A DNA stretch of 64,000 nt from Pristiophorus japonicus (GCF_044704955.1 NC_091989.1:104284001-104348000); one strand, 5' to 3'; counted from the stretch's first letter, positions 1,826 through 56,100 are shown. The notes: generated by a model not told the origin, from the sequence alone. A program made the numbers and translations.

Positions 1826-2481
1826 CTTTAATGTTAGCCTTTATTGCAAGGGGGATAAATTATAAAAGAAGAGATGTCCTACTACAACTGTACATGATAT
1901 TGGTGAGGCCACACCTAGAGTACAGCATACAGTTTTAGTCTCTGTATTTAAGGAAGGATATACTGGCATTGGAGGTTGTTCAGAGAAGCTTCACTAGGTT
2001 GATTGCGGAGAAGAGGGGGTTGACTTACGAAGATAGGTTGAGTAGTTTGTGCCTTTATTCATTGGAGTTCAGAAGAATGAGAGTTGATCTTATCGAAACA
2101 TATAAGATAATGAGGTGGCTCGACAAGGTGGATGCAGAAAGGATATTTCCACTCATGGGTGAAACTAAAGCGCAGGGGCATAGTTTCAGAATAAGGGACC
2201 GTCCATTTAAAACTGAGATGAGGTGGGATTTCTTCTCTCAGAGGGTTGTAAATCTGTGGAGTTCTCTGCCCTGGAGAGCTGTGGAGGCTGGTTCACTGAA
2301 TATATATAAGGTGGAGATAGATGATGTTTGAGCGATAAGGGAATAAAGGATTATGAGGAGTGAGTAGGGAAGTGGAGCTGAGTTCTTGATCAGATCAGCC
2401 ATGATCTAATTAAATGGTGGAGCAGTCTCGAGAGGTCAAATGTGCAACTTCTTCTCCTATTTCTTATGTTCTTATGTTCTT
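1826..2481 (+). mobile_element. CR1 LINE 3' fragment, second subfamily (TTCTTATG tail)
   Basis: Encodes LVRPHLEY..QRSFTRLI..YSLEFRRMR..FFSQRVVNLW. Tail TTCTTATGTTCTTATGTTCTT. Confidence 0.9.
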
Positions 2482-2907
2482 ACTCTGACTTTAAATATGA
2501 TAAGGTGAAGAGAATGGTTTTCTTCACTCTCTGGGTTGGATGACTAAAGGCATTTCAAAGAATGCTCATACTTGCAATACCAAATGTTCTGCTGTAATAA
2601 AGTCTAAATACATGAAGTAAATTTTAAGCAACACTAAAATTACGTTATTTTTACATTTGATTTCCTCGTCTAATATTAATCATAGAATTGTAGAAACATA
2701 AAATCTTGCAGAACACAAGGAGGCCATTTGGCCCGGTGTGCCTGTGACAGCTCCTTGAAAGAGCTATCCAATTATTCCAGCACCTCGGCTATTTCCTCAT
2801 AATCCTCCAAATTAGCCTTCTTCAAATACATCTCAATTGCCTTTTGAAAGTTCATATGGAATCTGCTCCCACCACACTTTCACGTAGTACATTCCGAATA
2901 TTGACTA

Positions 2908-23199: not shown

Positions 23200-24456
23200 A
23201 TGTCATCGGGCAAAGGATTAGACTGGGGGTTAGACAACTCCCCTACTAAGTTCTATGTGGATGACCGGAAGGGATTAATCGACAAAATGTTAAAAGATGG
23301 GTGAGACCCGTTACAAGAACCAGCCGAGCAAAAGGCTTGGTGCGGAAAAGAGAAAACTAAGAGAGCCAAGAAAGCCGGTGTAATTATAGTGGGAGAGTTT
23401 TTACAATTTAGTGACAAGATGAAACCCAAAATTGAGGAATTAAGGCAATTAAGGGAAGAAGTAAAGAAACTAAGAGAAGCTAATGAAACCCGTTGTGTGT
23501 CCAGACTTTTTGGGAGACCCAGAGACTACGACAGGGACGAAGGCAGGGAGCCGGAGGCACCCACTTTCTATGAAAAAGCGAGAGTTACTGCACCCGAGTA
23601 TGACCTAGAGGATGATACTCAGCTCCCTGCAGCCCCATTGTGAACATCCAATACGGGACAGGGAGCTGACCGTAAAGTAGCAGTGAAATACATACCGTTT
23701 ACCCATTTGGAGAAACACGGGATCCTCAAGGATCTACCTTCTCTGAAGGAAAAACACAGCAATTCTGTATTTTGGAGATTGTTAAGGGAAATGTATGACA
23801 TCCACGAGATGCACGAGAGGGATGTACATCAGATAGTGAGGGCTAAATGCCCACGGCCTAAATGGGAGACATTAAGACAGCATTATAGAAATGGTGAATG
23901 GACTCCTTTGAATAATGCCAGTCAGGCAGTCCGACAGACAGCATACGATGATTTCACCCAGACAGTCCAAGCAGCCTTGCAAACTCCCGCTCCCAACTGG
24001 GGACTAATTTTGTTAGTCCGCCAGAAGAAAAATGAAAACAGCAGTGAGTATGGTCATAGATTGTGGACCGCCTATCAAGAATACTCAGGTCAGGCAGCCC
24101 CAGACAAGGAAGATCAGGCATTTTTAAAGATGTTTAAAGATGGCCCGTCAGCCGACCATCAGAAAATACTTAAGATGGGGGTAGTCGGCGCAGATACCTA
24201 TGCTGGACTGGTGAGCTGGGCATGCCAAGTGGATAATGAAGCCAGCCAACACCAGAAGCCGATCAAAGTAGAAATAGGAGCGGCACCTAGCAAAAGACCC
24301 AGTGGAGTTTGCTACAATTGTGGCAAACCCGGACACATATCCAAGGACTGTACGAGTCCACATCCCAAGTGCACCAAATGCCAGAAAATGGGGCACAACA
24401 AAAACCAGTGTTGGGTGCCGGGAGGGGCTGGAAAAGTCCCACACTATAGGGACTGA
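23200..24456 (+). pseudogene. gag: Retroviral gag with coiled-coil segment and two CCHC zinc knuckles (2 internal stops)
   Basis: A single frame from ATG 23200, with TGA at 23302 and 23641. Contains CYNCGKPGHISKDC and CTKCQKMGHNKNQC. Confidence 0.85.
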
Positions 24457-33700: not shown

Positions 33701-34439
33701 TTTCTATATTTGTAACTCGTGTTGATCTGGAATTGCATGGTATTCAGATGCGAATATCTGATCCAGTTGTGATTACTATGCTGATGGTTAGGAGCTTCTG
33801 GGCTCTGATGCATTAACCTGGTGTGGGATATTGATTGATTATACTTACCAATGTTTGTTGATAAAAGATGTGATGGCACAACAATGAAATCCGTCTTCCA
33901 TGATTATGTCTGATTTTTTTAGCCATGCATGCAATTAAGTAACCTCTATCGTAACTTCTCCTTCATCATTCTGACCAAGGAGCTCAGGCAATCTTGGGCC
34001 AGAAGGAATGGGTGATGGCTAAACATAAATAAGACTCTGGTAGATTAGAAGAAGAATCAAGGGTTAATGGCCGACCCCACAGTGAATGTAAAGAGTATCT
34101 GAATCCCACTGAGAGCCATCCATATGTACAGGCTGCAATTGACTTACTGCTAGAGTTAATGTAATCCATCAAGGATGATTCAGGGTGAATTCACCAATAT
34201 GGCTGGTAAAGTAACCAGATGGCAGTTGTCAATTAAGAATATATTAAAGGAAACACCTCCGTAAGCACCCATTGCTAAAGATTCATGCAAAAGGACGGTC
34301 CAGATCATTTCAACCAACCCCAACTCCAATGAACATAAGAACATAAGAAATAGGAGCTGGAGTAGGCCATACAGCCCCTCGAGCCTGCTCCACCATTTAA
34401 TATGATCATGGCTGATCTGATCATGGACTCAGGTCTACC

Positions 34440-42499: not shown

Positions 42500-42635
42500 C
42501 CGCAATTACAGGATGTCAAACGTCACTGCGATGTATCTCATAGAAAACTAACCGCAAACCAATGTTAACAGTTGTAAACTCGCAGTTCCTGCAGAAACTC
42601 ATTATTTGAATCTGTTGCTCAGAAAGTCGGCGAGT
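42500..42635 (+). promoter_or_regulatory. Putative TATA-less proximal promoter of the IgSF gene
   Basis: ETS-like CAGGATGT (about 42509), CRE half-site ACGTCA (42520), RUNX AACCGCA (42550), CCAAT (42559), MYB/E-box AACAGTTG (about 42567) and ETS TTCCTG (about 42586). Confidence 0.5.
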
Positions 42636-42678
42636 ATGCTTTTCCTGTGCCTGACTCTCCGGGGGATTATTTACACAG
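42636..42678 (+). CDS. IgSF receptor exon 1, leader peptide
   Basis: ATG..MLFLCLTLRGIIYT, then CAG|GTATCT; phase 1, matching the next exon. Confidence 0.75.
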
Positions 42679-42846
42679 GTATCTCTTTATTCATTGTCTC
42701 AGCTACTTTAATTTATAAAATGCTTCCAACATAGTTTCCACACCAACTTAGTGAAAAGTACTTCCTCTATCTAGATTATTTTCTGTCTTCCATCTCCATG
42801 TCCTGTCTAATACAATTAACCTGTACTTGACGATATTTCCTTCCAG

Positions 42847-43170
42847 CAGCGGGCCAGATTTCGTTTAGTGTGACTCAAGCGCCCAAACAAACGACTGTGT
42901 CCAGAGGTGGGAACATCACCTTCTATTGCATATTCCCCACCTCTCAGGACCCATTCTCCTGGGTAAGAGTGTATTGGTGGAAACAGGGTGAGAATGAATA
43001 CCTGCGCACAAGCACCGACAAAAGAAAACAATTTGGTCTGGAAAATAAAGCGAGCAGTTACTTTCAGTTGCTGAGCGCGACTTTCCAAGACTCTGGGGTC
43101 TATCAGTGCGCAGTGTTCTATCGGGGAGCAGTTAGAGGAAATGGAACCGGCTCACAACTAATTGTACATG
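42847..43170 (+). CDS. IgSF receptor exon 2, single-exon VJ-type variable domain (NKp30/NCR3-like)
   Basis: Acceptor TTTCCTTCCAG. Encodes SVTQAP..ITFYC..VYWWKQ..DSGVYQCAV..GNGTGSQLIVH. Donor G|GTAAGT; phase 1/1. Confidence 0.95.
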
Positions 43171-44210
43171 GTAAGTGTGAAACACAGGAGAGCGGGACTG
43201 TCGAAAATATATCGAATGTAACAAACGGGCATGTTTTGTGATTCTTTTATTGCGCCGTTTTTGGCAGTATAAACATGTCTATTAATACATTTCGCGATAA
43301 GTTAAGTTGTATGTTCGTGTTCTCTGCACAGAACTGCTAAGGAGACATTAAATATCACAGACAAAATACTGCTAAATGTATTACTATTAACCAATTAGAC
43401 TATAACTCCACAGACAATTTATATACCTGATCTCTGAAAGCGGCATTCAGAACAAATCCCACGCATATAACTGACTGAAAACCGTTCATATTAACGCCTC
43501 TGCCAACATATATCGGCTCTTAGCCCATTTCTGATGCTCTGGCTGCCCTCATCGCTTTTTTTGCGGTTTAACATTCCTGAAATTAATTCTCACATAATGT
43601 TAGCGTCAGGGATTTGAACGTCAGCCTGCAACTAACTGTTGATCAACGGGTTCATTCAACAAACTGGATCTTGGAACACACAACCTTGTCATCTCAATAA
43701 CCTCCAATAATTCAAACAGTACACCGGAACTGTGTTGCCGAAACCTCCTGAGGTTCAACCGAGTATAAATTCTTTCAGCAATTTTCATGTTTCGGCTGTG
43801 AGTTCTGTCCGATACCGACTAAGGGCGTGGTTTTATCATCAAAAATGTGCAGATTATTCGGCACAGACTGTGCGCAACAAACACGGAGAGACTCAGCGCG
43901 CCAACTTGTCTCGAGGTTTATTTACTTAACTATTTGGACTATGAAAAGCCAGCTTTCATTAGCAAATCGTTGCGACTTGTCTGCTGAGTAACCGAAAGTC
44001 TTGCACTTGATAGCGCAGGTAAAATTGAACAGATGCGGGTGTCTGTGAGCGATATGGATGTAGATGGTGAGCGTAACATTAAAAAGACAGGAGTCTGCGC
44101 TTTCGAATTGTGCTTTTATAATAAAATAGACAGAACTTAAATCAGCAACCTTATTTAATTTCTCTCAATGCTGTCCAGTAACTCGACTTTGTTCATTCTC
44201 TGTTCCGCAG

Positions 44211-44522
44211 CGGCCCCAACTCCACTGAAGATTGTCTCCGGGACAACTGAAGGGAGTTCATCTGTGTCTCTGACTCTTGTGTATAAAACGGCTGCGTTCT
44301 ATCCGGAGAATTTCACCCTCACTTGGTACAAAAATGGCGTAGAAATTGCATTAATAACAGATACAAATAAAGTGCAGAACACCGAGGGACTGTATGAAGT
44401 TTCCAGCTCTTTGGCTGAGACGCAGCCTGTCCCGAGCGACACCAATTATACCTGTTTGGTATCTCATGTCTCCCTCTCGACTCCAGCTGTGGTCACATAT
44501 ACTGTTTCTAAATCTAACCAAG
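44211..44522 (+). CDS. IgSF receptor exon 3, C1-set constant domain
   Basis: Acceptor TGTTCCGCAG. Encodes TLV(Y)KTAAFYPENFTLTWYKNG..GLYEVSSSL..NYTCLVSHVSL. Donor AAG|GTATGT; phase 1/1. Confidence 0.95.
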
Positions 44523-44785
44523 GTATGTGGCCAACAGTCCAAAAAGGTGAAACTGTTATATTCGTAAACAGATATAACTTACAGTTTGTACATGCTGATA
44601 ATCATGAACTTAGTCCACAGAAGTCCCATGGGAGATATCAACGAAAGCATTAAATTCATGTTTTAATATATAACATAAGTAAACCCGATCTGTTGAAAAA
44701 CTGGTTCGATCGCCCGCCACACATATATTCTCAGTCAAATCTAATTTGCCTTCCAATTCCTCTATTTGATGTATGATAAATATAA

Positions 44786-45620
44786 GAACATAAGAACATG
44801 AGAACATAAGAAATAGGAGGAACAGTAGGCCATACGGCCCATCGAACCTGCTCCACCGTTCAATAAGATCATAGCTGATCTTCTACCCCAACTCCATTTT
44901 TCCGTCCTATCCTCATATCCCTTGATTCCTTTAGTGCCCAAAAGCCTATCGATCTCAGGCTTGAATATTTTGATCGAGTGAGCATCCACAGCTAACCGGG
45001 GCAGAGTATTCCGAAGATTCACAAAAATCTGAATGAAGACATTTCTCCTCGTTCCAGATTCTCCAGTCGGGGGAACCGTCCTGTCAGTATTTACCCTGTC
45101 AAGCCTGTCAAGTGGAGGTACGGTAGCATAGTGGTTATGTTACTGGACTAGTAACACAGCGACCTGGAATAATGTTCTCAAAATCTGAATTTAAAACCCA
45201 CCATGGCAGCTGGGGAATTTAAATTCAGTTCATCAAATAAATCTGGAATAACACACTAGTATCACTAATGGTGACCATGAAACAATCGGACGAAGAAATT
45301 ACCAAATTTTCATAAAAACCCATCTGGTTCAAGAACAACGACTAATTTTTTTTTAAACTCTAAGAATGTTATACATTTCAAAGATATCACCTTTCATTCT
45401 TCTAAACTCCAGAGAATATAGGCCCGTTCTATTCAACCTCTCCTCACAGAACCTCCCTCTTATCCCTGGAATCAAACTAATGAATCTTCATTGCCTCTCA
45501 GGCAAGTATATCTTTCCTTAGGTAAGAAGACCAAAACTGTAAACAGTACCGCTCTCTCACCAACGGCCTATATAATTGCAGTAATAATTTCTTGTTCTTA
45601 ACCTCCAACTCCCTGGAAAC
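44786..45620 (-). mobile_element. Intronic CR1 3' fragment, interrupted by a SINE
   Basis: GAACATAA repeats at about 44786-44812. CR1 RT-like sequence resumes at about 45358. Confidence 0.8.
45113..45331 (+). mobile_element. tRNA-derived SINE fragment
   Basis: A-box-like TAGCATAGTGG at 45124-45134, a tRNA-like head, and the body GGTGACCATGAAAC..AAAAACCCATCTGGTTCA. Confidence 0.65.
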
Positions 45621-46697
45621 ATAAGCACCAATGTATATTTTATCCCATTATATTTCCTCTCCCACTTATTATTAATAATAATTTTCAGTTTCTTCTGTTT
45701 CTATGTTAATATTGTTTTACACTTTTCCATTGTCTGCTCCCCTTGCAAGACTGTTACCAAGATCTAGATTCATGTCGTTTGTGCTCGGGTTTCTCCCAAT
45801 ACAGTTCCTGATCCTGACCCCACTTTCGGAAAGTTCAGCTAAATATCACCAAGAGATTTATCTTTGTTGTTCCATTATATTTCATATTCTGGCCGTTAGT
45901 AATCATTATTTGTTTGTCTCCATGTTAAAATGATTTTATTCGTTTACATTATCTAGTTTTCCTGCATCAAGATTGTTATCAGGAGCGGTGGTGAAGCTGC
46001 CTGCACTCGCGCTTCTCCCAATGCAGAATACCGTCATGACCTTCCTTTTTCCGCGATCCCTGGTGAATTTGTCTGAAATTTATCCTCTGGCCAAATCTTA
46101 TACCTTATCTATCCATGGCATTGCGCCAAACCTCTCTCATACACTTAATTTAAAATGTGCTCACAACCTGCCTGCAATACAACCGGTTACATGTTTTTAA
46201 TAACTACTGATTGCCTCGCCAGACGTTTATTTATAAACCCGTCGCTCTCCTTTACTATTTACAGACATTCTTACTTCAATACATGCGATGTGTGTATTGC
46301 GGGTTTAACCGATTTCTGTAATTCGGCATTTATGCTGGCAACACCTAAACAATTGTCACTATCAAACAATTAAGTAAAGAACATAATAAAAGTCAAGAAC
46401 AATAACAAAGCATTTGGTCCAGGGAAATTGTCCCTCTAGTATTCCACCTCCGCTGCGCCAGTATTCGGAAACCTTAAATTCGGGATCCCGCAAATAATTC
46501 CAAATGCTTCTCATCCATTCGATGATGAAGTTCGCTTTAATATTTTATGTAAAAAAATAATTATTATACTTCAGTTTCCGTTCTATACTGCGAAGTTACA
46601 GAAGATGCCATTAGTTTAACCAATAAGCCCAGCTTAGGCCTCTTTTTACAAAACACCCATCATAATGTACCATTTAATGCTCCTATTTCTCTTGCAG

Positions 46698-46811
46698 ATA
46701 TTGCCGGTATATCCTCTTACTACTCGTGTTTTAGATATGCGGTGGGTGGACTGGTGATTCTCGTACTCTTTATCATCATTGGGAGGTACTGCCAATTTCA
46801 GATTAATAAAG
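46698..46811 (+). CDS. IgSF receptor exon 4, transmembrane segment
   Basis: Acceptor TATTTCTCTTGCAG. Encodes DIAGISSYYSCFRYAVGGLVILVLFIIIGRYCQFQINK. Donor AAG|GTAAGA; phase 1/1. Confidence 0.85.
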
Positions 46812-46995
46812 GTAAGATCTACTGTAAGCATTTGATTTTAATACAGAAATTCGGAGAGCAGACGGGTGAAGAGGAGTGAGTGTCTAGGAATAACACAGAA
46901 CAAGGGAAACTCTATTAGGGCTGAAACGTGAAGTCAGTGTTTTCTGTTTTCAGGGTCCACTGATCCAAACAGTAATAAATTCTGCAGTTCAAAAC

Positions 46996-47143
46996 ATAGA
47001 AACATAGAAAATAGGTGCAGGAGTAGGCCATTCGGCCCTTCTAGCCTGCACCACCATTCAATGAGTTCATGGCTGAACATGCAACTTCAGTATCCCATTC
47101 CTGCTTTCTCACCATACCCCTTGATTCCCCTGGTAGTAAGGAC
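46996..47143 (-). mobile_element. Short CR1 3'-tail insertion with an 8-bp TSD
   Basis: TTCAAAAC at 46988-46995 and 47144-47151 flanks the CR1 3' UTR and tail. Confidence 0.9.
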
Positions 47144-47690
47144 TTCAAAACGCAGAAATATTCCCAAAATCAAATTAAAAATAGATCCGATTATCTCCAT
47201 AAATGCAACAGAAATTTCCACTTTACGGTAAGTGATGAATGAAATTTGCCCTGACATACAATTACTTTCCAAACCAGTCCGTGTGGGTCAGCCATTAGTT
47301 TGAGTGAAGCGTTGTGAAGCTCTGATCCTGAATGGCTGTAGAAGAAGAGTGCAAGGTGCCTTTGTGACTTCTTTTAACAGCACACCAGCTACCACAGGGG
47401 CTTGGCAGAGCAAGGTCTTAGTCCAATGGCAAGGGGATCCAAGACGATTGCAGACCAGGTTCCTCTTTATGGGTCGAGTACCCACACAGATTCGACTCCG
47501 AGGGACTGCCTAAGACGAAATGGCTGCCGACCATTGCTGCTGGCTGCAGGAGCTGCAATGTCGGCAACATCTGAAACTGATAATCATGTTCGACTTATTA
47601 CGTTCTCGAGAAATATGATTGAAACCACTTATATAGAAATTGAGTAAATACGTCAATCATTCATTATGATTAAACGACATTAATTCACAG

Positions 47691-47740
47691 ATAAAAATGG
47701 TGTAAAAGAAGCGCAGCGCCGTGACGAACCAATACGTTGA
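47691..47740 (+). CDS. Candidate cytoplasmic exon 5 (DKNGVKEAQRRDEP; reads through to IR*)
   Basis: Acceptor TAATTCACAG, open in phase 1. The expected phase-0 donor position reads ATACGT instead of GTACGT. TGA at 47738-47740. Confidence 0.45.
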
Positions 47741-48384
47741 TTCATCCATCTGCGCAAAGGGCTGAAATATGAAGAAAGGTTGCTGTATTGGAGAGATGTT
47801 ATCATAATCATGTCAGAACAGTTTGTCGATGTTATAAAATTATTTGCCCTGCGTAACGGGTCATTCAAATCGTGTTTAGAAAAATGTTTAACACCAGGAG
47901 CTCGGGATGATATTGGTCTTCCGGAAAAAAAATCGAGCGTGGTGTAAACCCGGTTGCCGATTCGCTATGGCTGGTTTCGCGCTAATTTCTCACCCGCACC
48001 CGATGCTTACTGTTATAAATGGGTAAAGAGCAGAAATGAAAACTGTCAATTTCGTTGAAAATCAATCTCGGTAATAATTGTTTATACAGCCAATAATATT
48101 TGTTTTGGGGGAAAGAGCTTACTGAATCCGTCTTCTAGAACTACTGCACATTTAAATATTTCTGTAACTGTTTTGCTGAGATAACATCGATATGTTTAAA
48201 TATTAGTTACAATGACTGCAGTAATTATCGGCCTTCATATTCGCACTTATTTAAAGATAGTAATTTTGGTGTTTGTGTTTTATCTCTTGCCCAAACCATT
48301 CTGTTCAATGTTTCAGATGTGTGTAAACTGGTGAATGCAATGTAACAGATACATAACAAAGTATTTTGTTTCTGGCCCATGTAG

Positions 48385-48570
48385 GAAGCAAAGGCTGACA
48401 TCACTAATATGCAGCAGTAGATCGGAGCAGAACTATATAAACTCCAAGACCTAAACTTGAACTGGAGAGGGCCGAGGGACTGAGAAGCGGATCAATCAGA
48501 TGCAGTAGCACCGGCATTCATGCGATAACGGAGAAAAGAAGGTTGGCTGACTCTAGTCGTGTATTGTAGC
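48385..48570 (+). pseudogene. Candidate decayed terminal exon with an out-of-frame ITIM-like YAAV
   Basis: Acceptor TTTCTGGCCCATGTAG. Phase 0 gives EAKADITNMQQ*; the shifted frame gives YAAVDRSRTI*TPRPKLELERAE. AATAAA at 48820. Confidence 0.45.
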
Positions 48571-50540
48571 TCAGGCTGTTTGTGTGTTATTCTGATGACG
48601 ACTTTCAGCAGCTGCCAGGAAACTGGTAAAACGACCGATTAACAATCGTTCTAAACACGGCTTTAATGAACAAACAAGGGACCGACGCGACTATCGAATT
48701 ATCACGGTCCAAAAATCAAATGAAAACAGAGTAACTTATTCCAGTATTATATCATAGAATGTAGGTGTAATTTTATGTTATCGCTTTAATATTTGAGGAA
48801 TTTTCATTTAAACACTTGTAATAAAATGACCATTGCTTGTATATTTTTGATCAATCTGTAGTATTTAACAGACGACAAATATCTGCACTAATACGATCAT
48901 TCCTTTGCTATATCGAGTTATCATCATACATAAATTCAATAAAAAATAATACTATTAGATCTCTCTCTCATCAATCAACCTTTCATGATTTTCTTTGCGA
49001 ATAAAACTACAAAGCCTGAGTTTTGATGTGTGTGTTGGGTTACTGTATCCTGACTTCCACTGCAGGCCCTTCTCCTGATTTGGACGATCCAGTCTATGAA
49101 CTATTCCATAAACCATCTGAACGCAGCTTGCAGATGATGGGGCATGAGATGCCTTTCTCTAAATTCTGCATTACTATCCATTCCTATTTGAAACGATGCA
49201 ACCTGAAAACTTCAAGTTGCTAACAAAGAAATGGCCTCGAATATTCTCATTAGATTTTGTCTTAGAAAGGATAATGTTTCTAGAATGTTTCTAGTCAGAC
49301 GAGCAGCAGTAATGAATCCTAGAGGTTGTGAGAGGATCCCTGCAGAAGTTGTGAGAGGATCCCTACAGAATTAACGGCGAAGCGGCATTTAAACATTTCA
49401 AAGACGTGGACAATATCAATATTAGTAGCGAGTAAGGTTTGACATGTAGTCAGAATTAACAAGCCCCAGTAAGCGAGTATAACTACAATCATTTACCTAT
49501 TTTAACGTGGCTGCCTCGTCAGCTGAAATTTAACTGCGATTCCACGATTACACTGTGAGTATTGAGGAAGGAGATCACTTGACTTAAAGTGTTTAAACAT
49601 TGCGCGGCAAGTTACTGGAAGAAAGACAGCCCAACAGTTCCAGTGACACGCTTTTAGCTCCGAATTTAAAGATAATACAAGACGAAGTGAATCCGTTGCC
49701 TCTTCGGCCGAACTGTTCTGGATTGATGACTGTGTGCATTAACACGCATTTTAGAATCCTGAAATATTACAGCACAGATTTTGGTCAGGAGGCTCTAAAA
49801 GTCGGTACTTTTGTTCCTCCCCATTTGAAACACTTCGTTAGTTCCAATGTTCTTTTATATTTCTATTATCTTTAATATACCTCTTTTTCAAGCAACTAAT
49901 TCACTTCTAAAATAATTGCTGGGCGGTGATTCAACAACGTTCTGTGGCAGAGAACGTCCACATTCATATTCCAACAAGCCTCTGTGCAAAGAGTATTTTA
50001 CCGCTTTATGTTTTGCGATTATATTCAAGTTACGCTCACGCGTCACCGTCTACCTGTTATTGGAAATATTCTATCACTATTTGCTTATCATAAAGCCTCA
50101 TAGTCTTGAAAACTTATATCAGGTCACTCCTCAATCTTTTCAGCTTCACTGAAAAATGTCCACGCTTCTCAAATAATAACCGTCCATACATGGTCATTTA
50201 GACGGCACTTTTTAATTTCATTTTGTATTCTTCCATAGTTTACACAAGCTCTTACCTCATGTGAGCATTACCTCCTTGCTGGTATATATGTCACCAAATT
50301 CTAAATCAACAACTCCGATTACACTTTTACTGCATAATACATTTATGTTGCCACCATTCATTGAGATCCGTCTGCTCCTCTGCACCATTAAAAAGCCTAC
50401 CATTCAAGATGTATTTCTTGTTCCGACTTATACCTCCATAACTGCGGCATTTCTCATGTCTCTGCATTCTACATTAAACATGTATCTGCCCTTCGAGCTA
50501 ACTATCGATGTCGCCTGCAGCAATTCAGGATCTGCATCAT

Positions 50541-50846: not shown

Positions 50847-51731
50847 TAATTGCCTTCCCGACTCCCCTTTAGTCATCATCTGCAAATGTTAATGTTGTTC
50901 CCTCAATTTCTCAACAAGATTATTGATATTTAAAGTAAACATAATCAAACACAGTGTCCCTGGGTCACCACTCGGGGTGGCTTGCCAATCCTAGAAACGT
51001 CGTTTTATCCTTAAACTTATGTTGATATCGCCCAACCATCTCCCTATCCATCTACCATGGAGCCCTCACTTCCGTGTGCCTTCTTCACATGTGGTACCGC
51101 ATCAAATGCGTTTTTTAAATCCACATGAACTGCATCTGCTGCATTTCATTTATCTATTCCCTCTCTTATTTCTTCAGTGAATTGTGTAATTGAAGCACGA
51201 TCTGTCTTTTGCAAAATTCGTGCTGACTCGGCTGCATTAGCTCAACATTCTGCAAGAGATTAGCAGATTTATCTCGAATGATACAGGGCCTGCGAGCTGT
51301 AAGTAAATGTGCAACTGTTTACCTATCATTATGTTGCAATCTGTATCACATGATATTTTATGGTCTAATAATAATTCGTCGGCTTGAAGATGGAGATTAA
51401 ATCAGCGTGGAGTAGGTTACGTAAACGAAAGTAATGTACATCAGTAAAAGATGAGTATTTGAACGTCCTATCAGTCCTGTGTTCTGGCTGAATGAAAGGT
51501 ATCAACGGAAATGTTCACCGATCTTTTTTATTCGCTGCACGAGATGTGTTGCTAAATATTGGCACGAGCATATCGCTTTCTCGAGCAAAGTAAACACCAT
51601 GGCTCAGTAGCTCCGCTCCAAGCACCAACTGCTCAAAGTTTAAATTTATCTGTTAATTGCAACATCATGAACACGCGTTGGGTGTCGAATAATGGTGGGT
51701 ATTAAGCACCATGTTTCAATATAATTACAAC

Positions 51732-51958
51732 AACATAAGAACGTAAGAAATACGAACAGGAGTAGGCCATACGCTCCTGAGCCTGCTCCGCCATTCAATA
51801 AGATAATGGCTGATCTGATCGTGGACTCAGCTCCAGATCCCCGCCAACTCCCCATAACCCGTTATTCCCTTATCGTTTAAGAAATTGACTATTTCTGTCT
51901 TAAATTTATTCAATGGCACAACTTCCACAGCTCTCTGAGGCAGCAAATTCCACAGATG
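51732..51958 (-). mobile_element. CR1 3' tail fragment
   Basis: Begins AACATAAGAACGTAAGAAATA..GGAGTAGGCCAT. Confidence 0.8.
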
Positions 51959-53185: not shown

Positions 53186-56100
53186 CATAGAAATATAGAA
53201 AATAGGTGCAGGAGTAGGCCATTCGGCCCTTCAAGCCTGCACCGCCATTCAATGAGTTCATGGCTGAACATGCAACGACAGTACCCCATTCCTGCTTTCT
53301 CGCTATACCCCTTGATCCCCGAGTAGTAAGGACGACATCTAACTCCTTTTTGAATATATTTAGTGAATTGGCCTCAACAACCTCCACAGGTTCACCACTC
53401 TCTGCGTGAAGAAGCTTCTCTTCATCTCGGTCCGAAATGGCTCACCCCTTATCCTTAGACTATGACCCCTGGTTCTGGACTTCCCCAACATTCTTCCTGC
53501 ATCTAACCTGTCCAACCCCATCAGAATTTTAAACGTTTCTATGAGATCCCCTCTCATTCTTCTGAACTCCAGTGAATACAAGCCCAGTTGATCCAATCTT
53601 TCTTGATATGTCAGTCCCGGCATCACAGGAATCAGTCTGGTGAACCTTCGCTGCACTCACTCAATAGCAAAAACGTCCCTCCTCAAGTTAGGAGACCAAA
53701 ACTGTACACAATACTCCAGGTGTGGCCTCACCAAGGCCCGGTACAAATGAAGTAACATCTCCCTGCCCCTGTACTCAAATCTCCTCGCTATGAAGGACAA
53801 CATGCCATTTGCTTTCTTAACCGCCTGCTGCACCTGCATGCCAACTTTCAATGATTGATATACCATGACACTCAGGTCTCGTGGCACCTCTCCTTTTCCT
53901 AATCTGTCACCATTCAGATTATAGTCTGTCTCTCTGTTTTTACCACCAAAGTGGATAACCTCACATTTATCCACATTATACTTCATTTGCCATGCATTTG
54001 CCCACTCACCTAACCTATCCAAGTCACTCTGCAGCCTCATAGCATCCTCCTCACAGCTCACACTGCCACCCAACTTAGTGTCATCCGCAAGTTTGGAGAT
54101 ACTACATTTAATCCCCTCGTCTAAATCATTAATGTACAATGTAAACAGCTGGGGCCGCAGCACAGAACCTTGCAGTGCCCCACTAGTCACTGCCTGCCAT
54201 TCTAAAAAGTACCCATTTACTCCTACTCTTAGCTTCCTGTCTGCCATCCAGTCCTCAATCCACGTCAGCACACTACCCCCAATCCCATGTGCTTTAACTT
54301 TGCATATTAATCTCTTGTGTGGGACCTTGTCGAAAGCCTTCTGGAAGTCCAAATACACCACATCAACTGGTTCTCCCTTGTCTACTGTACTGGAAACATC
54401 CTCAAAAAATTCCAGAAGATTTGTCAAGCATAATTTCTCTTTCACAAACCCATGCTGACTTGGACCTATCATGTCACCTCTTTCCAAATGCACTGCTATG
54501 ACATCCTTAATAATTCATTCCATCATTTTACCCACTACCGATGTCAGGCTAACCGGTCGATAATTCACTGTTTTCTCTTTCCCTCCTTTTTTAAAACGTG
54601 GGGTTACATTGGCTACCCTCCACTCCATAGGAACTGATCCAGAGTCTATGGAATGTTGGAAAATGACTGTCAATGCATCCGTTATTTCCAAGGCCACCTC
54701 CTTAAGTACGGTGGGATGCAGACCATCAGGCACTGGGGATTTATCGGCCTTCAATCCCATCAATTTCCTCACAACAATTTCCTGACTAATAAGGATTTCC
54801 CTCAGTTCCTCCTTCTTACTAGACCCTCTGACCCCTTTTTTATCCGGAAGGTTGTTTGTGTCCTCCTTAGTGAATACTGAACCAAAGTACTTGTTAAATT
54901 GGTCTGCCATTTCTTTATTCCCAGTTATGACTTCCCTTGATTCTGATTGCAGGGGACCTACGTTTGTCTTTACTAAACTTTTTCTCTTTACATATCTATA
55001 GAAGCTTTTGCAGTCAATTTTAATGTTCCCCGCAAGCTTTCTCTCGTACTCTATTTCCCCTGCCCTAATCAAACCCTTTGCCCTCCTTTGCTGAGTTCTA
55101 AATTTCTCCCAGTCCCCGGTTTCGCTGCTATTTCTGGCCAATTTGTATGCCACTTCCTTGGCTTTAATACTATCCCTGATTTCCCTTGATAGCCACGGTT
55201 GAGCCACCTTCCCTTTTTTATTCTTACGCCAGACAGGGATGTACAATTGTTGTAGTTCATCCATGCGGTCTCTAAATGTATGCCATTGCCCATCCACTTT
55301 CAATCCCTTAAGTATCATTCGCCAATCTATCCTAGCCAATTGACGCCTAATACCTTCAATTTTACCCTTCTTTAATTTCTGGACCATGGTCTCTGAATGA
55401 ACCATTTCATTCTCCATCCTAATGTAGAATTTAACCATATTATGGTCACTCTTCCCCAAGGGGCTTCGCACAATGAGCTTGCTAATTAATCCTCTCTCAT
55501 TACACAACACCCAGTATAAGATGGCCTCCTCCCTAGTTGGTTCCTCGACATATTGGTCTAAAACCCTCCTCCATCGTATTGCTTCCAGTTTGGTTAGCTC
55601 AATCTATATGCATATTAACCCATGATAACTGCTGCACCATTATTGCATGCATGCCTAATTTCCTGTTTGATGCCCTCCCCAACATCACTACTACTGTTTT
55701 CTGCCCCTTGGTATTCCGTAGCTCCACCCATACCGATTCCACATCATCCAAACTAATGTCTTTCCTTACAATTGCATTAATATCCTCTCTCACCAGCAAC
55801 GCCACCCCACCTCCTTTTCCTTTCTGTCTATCCTTCCTAAATGTTGAATACCCTTGGATGTTGAGTTCCCAGCCTTGGTCACCCTGGAGCCATGTCTCTG
55901 TGATGCCAACCACATCGTATCCGTTAACTGCTATCTGCACAGTTAATTTGTCCACCTTATTCCGAATACTCCTCGCACTGAGGCACAGAGCCCTCAGTCT
56001 TGCCTTTTTAACACACTTAGACCCTTTAGAATGTTGCTGCAAAGTGGCCCTTTTTGTTTTTTGCCTTGGGTTTCTCTGTCCTCCACTTTTACTCATTTCC

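What the first reader, a model, noticed from the sequence alone, without database searches (positions are those of the whole stretch)
42636..48420. Non-rearranging VJ-C1-TM receptor: an antigen-receptor chain layout without V(D)J recombination
Seen: four phase-1 exons splice into leader, V, C1 and TM. The V exon already carries a J-like diglycine strand (GNGTGSQLIV) and I see no RSS. Known: single-exon VJ domains typify NKp30/NCR3, CD8 and SIRP, while C1 domains are largely confined to Ig, TCR, MHC, tapasin and SIRP. NKp30 has no C1, and mammalian SIRPs typically have V-C1-C1. Inference: one VJ plus one C1 plus TM is the predicted form of a pre-RAG antigen-receptor ancestor. This may be a member of a poorly characterised cartilaginous-fish innate receptor family lying in a TE-dense cluster.
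Basis: partly seen in the sequence, partly recalled or inferred. Interest (0 to 1): 0.85.

Follow-up and report, generated by a model that had tools for sequence, protein, structure and literature searches.

The report
Shark SIRP-like VJ-C1 receptor gene
This is a real, non-rearranging shark immune-receptor gene (one variable-type and one constant-type antibody-like domain plus a membrane anchor), but it is one copy of a large receptor family found in all sharks, rays and chimaeras checked, not a unique relic of the antigen-receptor ancestor, and this copy has lost its inhibitory tail and one key cysteine.

Summary
The four phase-1 exons (leader, joined VJ, C1, TM) are real; the three junction codons give the residues that homologues carry. 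There is no RSS. The gene is not a lone pre-RAG relic. It belongs to a large multigene family predicted in about 17 chondrichthyan species, which NCBI auto-names "SIRP-alpha-like", "SIRP-beta-like", "tapasin-related" or "Ig lambda-like". Its closest relatives are Heptranchias, Heterodontus, Mustelus and Scyliorhinus proteins (V 61-72%, C1 66-78% identity). Most family members carry 1-5 ITIM-type tyrosine motifs. A minority, including this copy, have an Arg in the membrane span and a short tail, the layout of an activating partner in a paired-receptor system. Probable relics of two ITIM exons lie 1.6-1.9 kb downstream, broken by a frameshift, two stops and lost tyrosines. The gene may therefore be recently crippled. 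Expression could not be tested. This scan has already reported the same family several times elsewhere in this genome.

The parts
42624..42626 (+). AAG at the position of the initiator Met of the closest homologues (MSASM...); here it reads K-S-A-S-M
   Evidence: the leader is 13/14 identical to Heptranchias P0163/P0165, which start four codons earlier.
42636..42678 (+). Leader exon (MLFLCLTLRGIIYT + 1 base), donor GT at 42679; split leader, phase 1
42847..43170 (+). Single-exon VJ domain (324 nt, phase 1-1) with both canonical Cys, the Trp, D-x-G-x-Y-x-C and the J-like N-G-T-G-S-x-L-x-V; two N-glycosylation sequons (NIT, NGT)
44211..44522 (+). C1-set domain exon (312 nt, phase 1-1)
44282..44284 (+). 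TAT (Tyr) where 79/79 family members have the first disulfide Cys of the C1 domain (TGT/TGC expected)
46698..46811 (+). Stalk/transmembrane exon (114 nt, phase 1-1): D-IAGISSYYSCFRYAVGGLVILVLFIIIGRYCQFQINK
   Evidence: 62% identity over 29 aa to the short-tailed catshark protein P0002, E 1.7e-8
46733..46735 (+). AGA = Arg in the outer part of the membrane span. The same position is Arg in short-tailed relatives from catshark, smooth-hound and stingrays
48385..48470 (+). Probable relic of the first ITIM exon. The AG acceptor is kept. There is a 1-nt frame slip just before the ITIM Tyr (YAAV at 48408-19) and a TAA at 48438-40. Spliced in phase 1 from the TM exon it gives GSKG then TGA (48396-98)
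   Evidence: tblastn E 0.049/0.23 to the tails of P0164/P0163; best match in the window for the exon profile, but 4.8 bits is not above shuffled maxima
48609..48733 (+). Probable relic of the second tyrosine-motif exon: acceptor kept, TAA at 48627-29, 'TVYAQ' Tyr replaced, ITIM Tyr now Asp (GTDATIELSRSK versus LTYATLDLSGSK)
   Evidence: (best match in the window for that exon profile, 2.7 bits)

Best explanation
This is a germline-joined (never rearranging) VJ-C1-TM gene. It belongs to a large multigene family of SIRP-like paired immune receptors, found so far only in chondrichthyans. Most members are inhibitory, with a long tail carrying 1-5 ITIM/ITSM-type tyrosines. This copy is of the minority 'activating-type' class: it has an Arg in the outer part of the membrane span and a cytoplasmic tail of about 13 residues. 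What look like its former ITIM exons lie decayed downstream. If it still works, the V domain binds a ligand at the cell surface. The TM Arg would then pair with an acidic residue of an ITAM-bearing adaptor (FcR-gamma/CD3-zeta/DAP12 type) to deliver an activating signal. That signal would counterbalance inhibitory paralogues with similar ectodomains. The anatomy, family membership, Arg/short-tail association and lack of RSS are shown. Adaptor pairing, the ligand and expression are inferred. The copy also carries two derived defects, C1 Cys24->Tyr and loss of the ancestral start ATG, so it may be recently impaired.
For: The exon model and junction residues match homologues. The V exon finds 164 representative clusters, 82 of them at E<1e-10. 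The best matches are Heptranchias P0163/P0165 (V 71-72%, C1 75-77%, leader 13/14), Heterodontus P0164 (C1 78%), Mustelus P0001 and S. canicula P0002. All named relatives are chondrichthyan and carry mutually inconsistent automatic names. Within each species most of them lie on one chromosome-size contig.

The V and C1 trees both place the gene in a 96% SH-aLRT subclade that holds ITIM forms and Arg/short forms together. Its end branch is short: 0.13, against medians of 0.27 and 0.23. All 15 conserved V sites and 20 of 21 conserved C1 sites are kept. An Arg embedded in the TM goes with tails of 40 aa or fewer: 13 of 16 versus 7 of 67, Fisher p 6e-8, not corrected for relatedness. The TM/stalk exon is 13/19 identical in the stalk to the short-tailed catshark P0002, against 6/19 to the ITIM-form P0163.

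Two independent tail-exon profiles have their best matches in the whole six-frame window 230 nt apart. Both are in the right order, on the gene's strand, behind AG acceptors and 1.6-1.9 kb past the TM exon. About 74 relic codons carry 3 disabling lesions, while the 264 coding codons carry none (Poisson P about 2e-5). This suggests the ectodomain and TM stayed under selection after the tail died.
Against: The invariant C1 cysteine is Tyr and the ancestral ATG is lost. These changes fit an early pseudogene as well as they fit a working gene. The relic-exon matches are individually no better than shuffled controls: 4.8 and 2.7 bits against null maxima of 3.4 +/- 1.9 and 3.1 +/- 1.9. Only their position and order are improbable. 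The exon between the TM exon and relic A was not found. The Arg lies near the outer edge of the span and could be juxtamembrane. No adaptor was tested.
Confidence: 0.7

Rival explanations
1. A recently inactivated pseudogene of the same family. The tail exons are dead, the ancestral start codon is gone, and the C1 domain has lost its disulfide, leaving an unpaired core Cys. The protein would then no longer be made or no longer fold.
For: Cys24->Tyr at a site invariant in 79 relatives. AAG at the homologues' initiator position. Decayed tail exons. No protein identical to these exons is present in the 15-billion-protein collection, and no RNA run was listed.
Against: There is no stop or frameshift in 264 codons, although the neighbouring relic exons have 3 in about 74 codons. 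All splice sites are intact. 35 of 36 family-conserved residues are kept, and the terminal branches are short; a rough Poisson P for at most 1 hit is 0.05. An in-frame Met conserved in the homologues remains. Short-tailed Arg forms are annotated as normal genes in other species.
Confidence: 0.3
2. One reading: a surviving representative of the pre-RAG antigen-receptor ancestor (VJ + C1 + TM), of special evolutionary standing.
For: The layout is the predicted one. It has a split leader, a single-exon VJ with a J-like G-x-G, a true C1 domain and no RSS. The family profile scores about as well against IgH, UrIg2 and SIRP-alpha. The V exon's best solved-structure matches are TCR V-alpha.
Against: It is one of dozens of paralogues per species in a family with ITIM tails. 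This copy is derived, not primitive. The same argument is already made in the literature for SIRP, UrIg/UrIg2, NKp30 and PRARP (PMC2785349, PMC12227049, PMC10751288). No MHC or Ig/TCR linkage was seen in the window.
Confidence: 0.07
3. A germline-joined immunoglobulin light-chain or TCR gene, as known in sharks. Some relatives are auto-named 'Ig lambda-1 light chain-like'.
For: V-C1 order, a J-like motif, and automatic names of some relatives.
Against: Solved Ig/TCR V domains match only weakly (E about 1e-6). The gene has its own TM exon and family-wide ITIM tails. The relatives form a separate large family with 40-78% identity to this gene. No RSS or J/C cluster structure is present.
Confidence: 0.02
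4. A B7-family (NCR3LG1/B7-H6 or CD276-like) ligand, or an NKp30 (NCR3) family receptor, as some automatic names and fold matches suggest.
For: PD-L1 V domains are among the V exon's sequence hits (E about 1e-5). NKp30 is a top structural neighbour (TM 0.77). Some relatives are named 'NCR3 ligand 1-like' or 'CD276 homolog'.
Against: PD-L1 matches stop before the J-like strand (query residues 5-94). NKp30 shares only 20% identity, is absent from the top 60 sequence hits, and has no C1 domain. With the family profile, IgH, UrIg2 and SIRP-alpha fill the top of the list and no B7 entry is in the best 60.
Confidence: 0.03

Closest known systems
Predicted chondrichthyan 'tyrosine-protein phosphatase non-receptor type substrate 1-like / SIRP beta-1-like / tapasin-related-like' genes (e.g. 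Heptranchias perlo P0163 = 'tapasin-related protein-like', Scyliorhinus canicula XP_038661932.1, Mustelus asterias XP_078066559.1, Callorhinchus milii XP_007902824)
   Same: Same domain order. V 61-72% and C1 66-78% identity. Same conserved motifs (NGTGSxLxV; PTPLKI; FYPxxxxLTWYKNG; GLYEVSS; YTCxVSH). The TM/stalk exon matches the short-tailed catshark member. The gene falls in a 96%-supported subclade in both the V and C1 trees.
   Different: This copy has Tyr for the invariant C1 Cys, a shifted start codon and decayed tail exons. No protein identical to it was found in the collection searched.
Mammalian SIRP family (SIRP-alpha inhibitory, SIRP-beta activating, SIRP-gamma short-tailed)
   Same: N-terminal V domain with a J-like strand followed by C1-set domain(s) and a TM. 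Paired logic of ITIM tails versus a basic TM residue with a short tail (PMC12975943, PMC2785349). SIRP-alpha is the best-scoring non-rearranging membrane receptor among solved structures, with a collinear V+C1 match (E 3e-33).
   Different: One C1 domain, not two. The basic residue is Arg near the outer leaflet, not the SIRP-beta Lys. With the single V exon, SIRP V domains are not among the 60 best solved-structure hits. Orthology, CD47 binding and synteny are untested. From memory only, the family's paired xTYAxLxL ... TEYAxIQ tail motifs resemble the SIRP-alpha tail; this is a lead, not a test.
UrIg / UrIg2 (non-rearranging shark VJ-C1 genes; PDB 9dmx; PMC12227049)
   Same: Elasmobranch, single-exon VJ with split leader, C1-type constant domains, no rearrangement. 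UrIg2 is the top solved-structure hit for the C1 exon by summed score (3.2e-12).
   Different: UrIg has three C domains and is secreted; UrIg2 has nine or more C domains. The top rank comes from summing three weak domain matches (11-18 bits each), whereas a single IgG CH1 domain scores 21 bits. UrIg2 is not among the 60 best hits for the V exon. UrIg genes are one or two per genome, not a large ITIM-bearing family.
[quoted passage not shown] 2019, cited in PMC10751288)
   Same: Non-rearranging VJ-type IgSF genes put forward as antigen-receptor precursor relics. From my own recollection of that paper, they have a VJ + C1 + TM layout.
   Different: Could not be compared: the paper is not held and no PRARP sequence was available from any tool.
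NKp30 / NCR3
   Same: Non-rearranging VJ domain with a G-x-G-containing, glycosylated G strand. TM Arg with a short tail. Close structural neighbour of the V model (3noi, TM 0.77).
   Different: NKp30 has no C1 domain. Identity is 20%, and it is not in the top sequence hits.

Membership tests
Chondrichthyan SIRP-like VJ-C1-TM multigene family (unnamed; known from NCBI gene predictions) | V domain significantly similar to family members, with conserved Cys/Trp/DxGxYxC and the NGTGSxLxV G strand | tested here: met
   phmmer E down to 2.4e-40, 61-72% identity to the closest members; 15/15 conserved sites kept
Chondrichthyan SIRP-like VJ-C1-TM multigene family (unnamed; known from NCBI gene predictions) | One C1-set domain with the family motifs, including both disulfide cysteines | tested here: inconclusive
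   66-78% identity and 20/21 conserved sites kept, but the first Cys (100% conserved) is Tyr
Chondrichthyan SIRP-like VJ-C1-TM multigene family (unnamed; known from NCBI gene predictions) | Placement inside the family in V and C1 trees | tested here: met
   Within a 96% SH-aLRT subclade in both trees, with Heptranchias, Heterodontus, Mustelus, Scyliorhinus and stingray members
Chondrichthyan SIRP-like VJ-C1-TM multigene family (unnamed; known from NCBI gene predictions) | TM exon of the family type (..GGL.FL.L.I.IG) followed by a cytoplasmic tail | tested here: met
   TM exon matches P0002 (E 1.7e-8), P0167 and others; the tail is short
Activating member of a paired-receptor family (SIRP-beta / activating KIR-like logic) | Basic residue within the transmembrane span | tested here: met
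   Arg (AGA 46733-35) four residues before the GG of the span. The same position is Arg in P0002, P0167, P0190 and P0003
Activating member of a paired-receptor family (SIRP-beta / activating KIR-like logic) | Short cytoplasmic tail without tyrosine motifs | tested here: met
   The phase-1 reading ends GSKG* at 48398; the ITIM-like codons downstream are out of frame or behind stops. The real 3' end is unverified, for lack of RNA data.
Activating member of a paired-receptor family (SIRP-beta / activating KIR-like logic) | Inhibitory partner with a similar ectodomain | tested here: met
   ITIM-bearing members share its subclade and are 72-78% identical in other species. A same-genome neighbour 5.4 kb past the window is only an unchecked scan note.
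Activating member of a paired-receptor family (SIRP-beta / activating KIR-like logic) | Physical association with an ITAM adaptor (DAP12, FcR-gamma, CD3-zeta) | not testable with these tools
SIRP family (mammalian definition) | V + two C1-set domains | tested here: not met
   Only one C1 exon lies between the V and TM exons, and tblastn finds no second one
SIRP family (mammalian definition) | Orthology / closest sequence relationship to SIRP | tested here: inconclusive
   SIRP-alpha scores E 3e-33 with the family profile, but IgA1 heavy chain (1.8e-40) and UrIg2 (1.2e-37) score higher. No tree with SIRP references was possible.
SIRP family (mammalian definition) | CD47 binding | not testable with these tools
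   -
Rearranging or germline-joined Ig/TCR chain | RSS-flanked segments, or a V nesting within Ig/TCR clades | tested here: not met
   No RSS. Solved Ig/TCR V domains match only at E about 1e-6, while family members reach 72% identity.
UrIg/UrIg2 | VJ followed by three or more C1-type domains; specific V similarity | tested here: not met
   Only one C1 domain. UrIg2 is absent from the 60 best V hits, and its per-domain C1 scores are below that of IgG CH1.
NKp30/NCR3 | Single VJ domain directly followed by stalk and TM (no C domain) | tested here: not met
   A C1 exon is present. NKp30 is only a structural neighbour at 20% identity.
PRARP | Sequence relationship to chicken PRARP1/2 | not tested
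   No PRARP sequence or paper text was available

The most novel reading that the evidence does not exclude
The family is the chondrichthyan counterpart of the SIRP/PRARP lineage, that is, a surviving branch of the pre-RAG V-C1 membrane receptor. This locus would then preserve a genomic fossil of how its activating members arise. An old Arg-bearing TM-exon lineage, shared by sawshark and catshark, is combined with an ectodomain kept similar to inhibitory paralogues. The disused ITIM exons are still recognisable downstream.
Probability: 0.2. Interest if true: 0.55.

Novelty: new member of a known kind. Interest (0 to 1): 0.35.

Why it matters
Sharks, rays and chimaeras carry a large family of non-rearranging V-C1 receptors in inhibitory and activating-type forms. 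The family is predicted by annotation pipelines, and I found no paper describing it. Such a family bears on two questions: how paired innate receptors work in the oldest jawed vertebrates, and which V-C1 genes stand closest to the precursor of Ig and TCR. This single copy adds little to that. It shows the family's activating-type design and probable leftovers of an inhibitory tail, and it may itself be decaying. It does not make the origin of antigen receptors more testable than UrIg/UrIg2 or SIRP already do.

Tried and rejected
- **Paralogues in the window.** tblastn of the four exon peptides against the window found none.
- **RNA evidence.** No RNA run was listed for the locus.
- **C1 exon homology search.** The search for homologous proteins with the C1 exon alone found nothing, as expected from its length filter.
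- **Orthologous DNA.** This ruled out dN/dS, a check of exon structure in relatives and synteny.
- **Tail profiles.** A whole-tail profile HMM and two exon-level profiles against the six-frame window ranked the relics first. Their scores did not exceed shuffled maxima, so the claim rests on position and order only.
- **Intermediate exon.** A profile for the exon between the TM exon and relic A found nothing convincing.
- **ESM Atlas.** A search with a homologue's cytoplasmic tail was uninformative.
- **Repeats.** Gapless repeat detection in the gene region found nothing. BLASTN showed that the intron-3 element is an interspersed repeat.
- **Literature.** Searches for a description of this shark family found only SIRP, UrIg and MHC papers. 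Several key papers are not held.
- **UrIg2 as closest relative.** Rejected, because its top rank is a sum of three weak domain matches.

Full report
**Anatomy**

On the + strand there are four exons with canonical AG/GT borders:
- a leader exon, 42636-42678;
- a VJ exon, 42847-43170 (324 nt);
- a C1 exon, 44211-44522 (312 nt);
- a stalk/TM exon, 46698-46811 (114 nt).

All are phase 1. The codons split by the introns read GCA, GCG and GAT (A, A, D). Homologous proteins have exactly these residues at the joints (...YTAAD......LIVHAAPTP......SKSNQD...).

Pfam gives V-set at 7.6e-9 over the whole profile and C1-set at 6e-10, against C2-set_2 at 1.5e-4. AlphaFold models built with family alignments are confident (pLDDT 92.6 and 84.7). 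Foldseek places the V model among IgNAR V, NKp30, CD79b and TCR/Ig V domains. It places the C1 model among MHC class II beta-2, class I alpha-3 and beta-2-microglobulin domains, all of them C1-set.

The J-like strand GNGTGSQLIV is there, and its G99-x-G101...L104-x-V106 is conserved in over 80-95% of relatives. No heptamer-spacer-nonamer RSS exists in the window. None of the nine bare CACAGTG heptamers, a chance-level number, lies in the gene.

1. *The fifth piece.* The stretch running to 48420 is not a clean terminal exon. In the phase imposed by exon 4, the splice to the AG at 48384 gives G-S-K-G and then TGA at 48396-98. The frame that ends in TAG at 48420 would need phase 0.
2. *The C1 cysteine.* Codon 24 of the C1 exon (TAT, 44282-84) encodes Tyr where all 79 aligned relatives have the first disulfide cysteine. 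Every other family-conserved position is kept: 15/15 in V and 20/21 in C1.
3. *The start codon.* The closest homologues start MSASMVFLCL. Here the first Met codon is AAG (42624-26), and translation would have to start at the conserved second Met.
4. *The cluster.* The window contains no paralogue. The rest of it is LINE reverse-transcriptase/endonuclease and retroviral gag-type ORFs.

**Family**

A phmmer search of 1.84 billion representative proteins with the V exon returned 164 clusters at E<=1e-3, 82 of them at E<=1e-10.

Every V+C1 relative for which a source name could be retrieved, about 90 in all, is chondrichthyan. The genera are Heptranchias, Heterodontus, Mustelus, Scyliorhinus, Carcharodon, Hemiscyllium, Chiloscyllium, Stegostoma, Pristiophorus, Hypanus, Hemitrygon, Mobula, Narcine, Amblyraja, Leucoraja, Pristis and the chimaera Callorhinchus.

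Their automatic names disagree: 'tyrosine-protein phosphatase non-receptor type substrate 1-like' (SIRP-alpha-like), 'SIRP beta-1-like', 'tapasin-related', 'CD276 homolog', 'NCR3 ligand 1-like', 'Ig lambda-1-like' and 'class II beta chain-like'. This is the signature of an uncurated family. In each species most members sit on one chromosome-size contig, often with consecutive accession numbers, which points to tandem clusters.

The closest proteins are:

| Protein | Species | V identity | C1 identity | Other |
|---|---|---|---|---|
| P0163/P0165 | Heptranchias | 71-72% | 75-77% | leader 13/14 |
| P0164 | Heterodontus | 69% | 78% | |
| P0001 | Mustelus | 67% | 72% | |
| P0002 | S. canicula | 61% | 66% | |

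Separate maximum-likelihood trees of the V and C1 exons both place the window gene in a subclade with 96% SH-aLRT support. That subclade mixes ITIM-bearing and short-tailed members. The gene's end branch is 0.13, against medians of 0.27 and 0.23.

**Two classes of members**

Most members have tails of 70-200 residues with a conserved series of motifs..Y-A-x-L-D-L-S...K-x-P-R-x-K, E-R-T-V-Y-A-Q, L-T-Y-A-x-L, T-E-Y-A-x-[LI]-Q. They carry 1-5 matches to the ITIM/ITSM pattern.

A minority have an Arg embedded in the outer part of the membrane span and a short tail. Examples are:
- P0002 ...SGFRYTVGGL... with 5 cytoplasmic residues;
- P0167 ...AIRCTVGGL... with 11;
- P0190 ...ISRCVMGGL... with 13;
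- stingray P0003 ...ILRCAMGVL....

An embedded Arg goes with tails of 40 aa or fewer: 13 of 16 versus 7 of 67 (Fisher p 6e-8). This count is not corrected for shared ancestry, but the pattern recurs in sharks, rays and the chimaera.

The window gene has ...SCFRYAVGGL..., with Arg at AGA 46733-35. Its stalk/TM exon is 13/19 identical in the stalk to catshark P0002, but only 6/19 to the ITIM-form P0163, whose ectodomain is the most similar. This is the design of paired receptors such as SIRP-alpha/SIRP-beta (PMC12975943). Ectodomains cluster by lineage, while the TM type is shared across a squalomorph and a galeomorph. That fits ectodomain homogenisation between paralogues, but it was not tested further.

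**Decayed tail**

tblastn with homologue tails finds YAAVDRSRTI*TPRPKLELER at 48408-48470, against YAALDLSKARKTPRLKGEEER in P0163 and YAAINLSRTSKTPRHKRE in P0164 (E 0.23 and 0.049). Directly behind the AG acceptor at 48384, the upstream residues EAKADITN lie in another frame, so there is a 1-nt slip just before the ITIM tyrosine. A TAA follows at 48438-40.

A second stretch behind the acceptor at 48608 reads QLPGNW*NDRLTIVLNTALMNKQGTDATIELSRSKNQMKTE, against ...EERTVYAQTKQG..NKLTYATLDLSGSKK.. in homologues. It carries a stop, and both tyrosines are replaced.

Exon-level profile HMMs put their best match in the entire six-frame window at exactly these two places (4.8 and 2.7 bits; next best 0.7 and 0.1). 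Shuffled windows, however, reach 3.4 +/- 1.9 and 3.1 +/- 1.9 bits, so the scores alone are not significant. What is improbable is the arrangement. Two independent best hits lie on the gene's strand, in the right order, 230 nt apart, each behind an AG, and 1.6-1.9 kb past the TM exon. My estimate of the chance of this is roughly 0.02 x 0.003. I therefore call them probable relics. The poorly conserved exon expected between the TM exon and relic A was not found.

If the relics are real, they carry 3 disabling lesions in about 74 codons, whereas the 264 codons of the four exons carry none (Poisson P about 2e-5). This suggests the ectodomain and TM stayed under selection after the tail was lost.

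**Functional state**

The evidence points both ways.
- *For a working gene:* intact ORF and splice sites, 35 of 36 conserved residues kept, short terminal branches, and a design that other species annotate as normal genes.
- *Against:* the C1 disulfide cysteine is replaced by a bulky Tyr, leaving Cys81 unpaired. The ancestral start codon is lost. No protein identical to these exons is present in the collections searched, and there is no RNA evidence.

A single G-to-A at 44283 could also be an assembly error or an allele. I put about 0.3 on 'already a pseudogene'.

**Comparison with known families**

- *Profile against solved structures.* The family profile scores IgA1 heavy chain (1.8e-40), UrIg2 (1.2e-37) and SIRP-alpha (3e-33, collinear V+C1) in the same range.
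- *C1 exon alone.* UrIg2 ranks first only because three weak domain matches (11-18 bits) are summed; a single IgG CH1 domain gives 21 bits.
- *V exon alone.* TCR V-alpha, PD-L1 and Ig V domains lead at E about 1e-6 to 1e-5. SIRP, NKp30 and UrIg2 are not in the best 60.

The gene therefore works like a SIRP-beta-type receptor and shares the V-C1 topology that made SIRP 'a link to antigen receptor evolution' (PMC2785349). Membership of the SIRP family proper is not shown: it has one C1 domain, not two, and orthology is untested. From memory, the SIRP-alpha tail has similar paired xTYADLxL / TEYASIQ motifs, which may explain NCBI's naming; I could not test this with a tool.

PRARP (cited in PMC10751288) could not be compared because neither the paper nor any sequence was available. 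None of the searchable papers describes this shark family. The UrIg2 paper does not mention it.

**Earlier notes of this scan**

These notes are unchecked leads. They attribute the genome to the Japanese sawshark. They report many other VJ-C1-TM(-ITIM) genes in it, including one 5.4 kb beyond this window's end and others 0.47 and 0.69 Mb further on the same piece. Follow-up agents reached the same 'SIRP-like family, activating form' verdict on other copies. One note on 46698-48570 of this window proposed the Arg plus dismantled-ITIM reading, which I tested as described above. One follow-up mentioned relatives in sturgeon and amphibians; among the roughly 90 named relatives I retrieved, none was non-chondrichthyan. 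All the MHC-related notes I retrieved lie on other pieces of the genome, so they give no sign of MHC linkage here. This is weak evidence.

**Limits**

No RNA run was listed, so no reads could be laid. No reference sequences of SIRP, PRARP, NCR3, TCR or IgL were obtainable for trees.

**Verdict**

This is a real gene and a new member of a known kind. It is of moderate interest as an example of an under-described chondrichthyan receptor family and of a probable inhibitory-to-activating conversion. It is not a unique ancestor-like relic.

Noticed in passing
window 44780-45110 (intron 3); also 2220-2482 (-), 34331-34418, 51719-51816; a similar element at about 46975-47150: An interspersed repeat beginning with AACATAAGAACAT...GGCCATWCGGCCC occurs in intron 3 and again just downstream of the TM exon. 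Further diverged copies (71-86% identity) lie elsewhere in the window.
   Followed up: partly
window 46804-46809: The last codons of the TM exon (ATT AAT AAA G|gt) contain a canonical AATAAA directly at the splice donor. Read-through of the donor would add 22 codons before a TGA. Whether this is ever used as a poly(A) signal is unknown.
   Followed up: no
window 42845-42849: Tandem NAGNAG acceptor (CAG|CAG) at the start of the VJ exon. The upstream AG gives the homologue-length signal-peptide end (YTAAG); the downstream one would drop one Ala.
   Followed up: no
window 7639-30632 and 53660-55510: Many LINE-type ORFs (RVT_1 at E 1e-12 to 2e-34; an endonuclease-RT domain) and a retroviral gag-like zinc-knuckle ORF at 23683-24453. 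Outside the receptor gene the window is almost entirely transposon-derived.
   Followed up: partly
Family proteins P0006 (1440 aa, 10 V-like stretches), P0019, P0039, P0050, P0062 (3550 aa, 16 stretches): The V-exon search also hits very long proteins made of many tandem V-like domains. One of them is from an ENA assembly and carries no name. Their relation to the VJ-C1 family was not examined.
   Followed up: no
P0162 (Scyliorhinus torazame, 413 aa): One close relative has two tandem VJ domains before its C1 domain (V-V-C1), which shows domain-number plasticity within the subclade.
   Followed up: no
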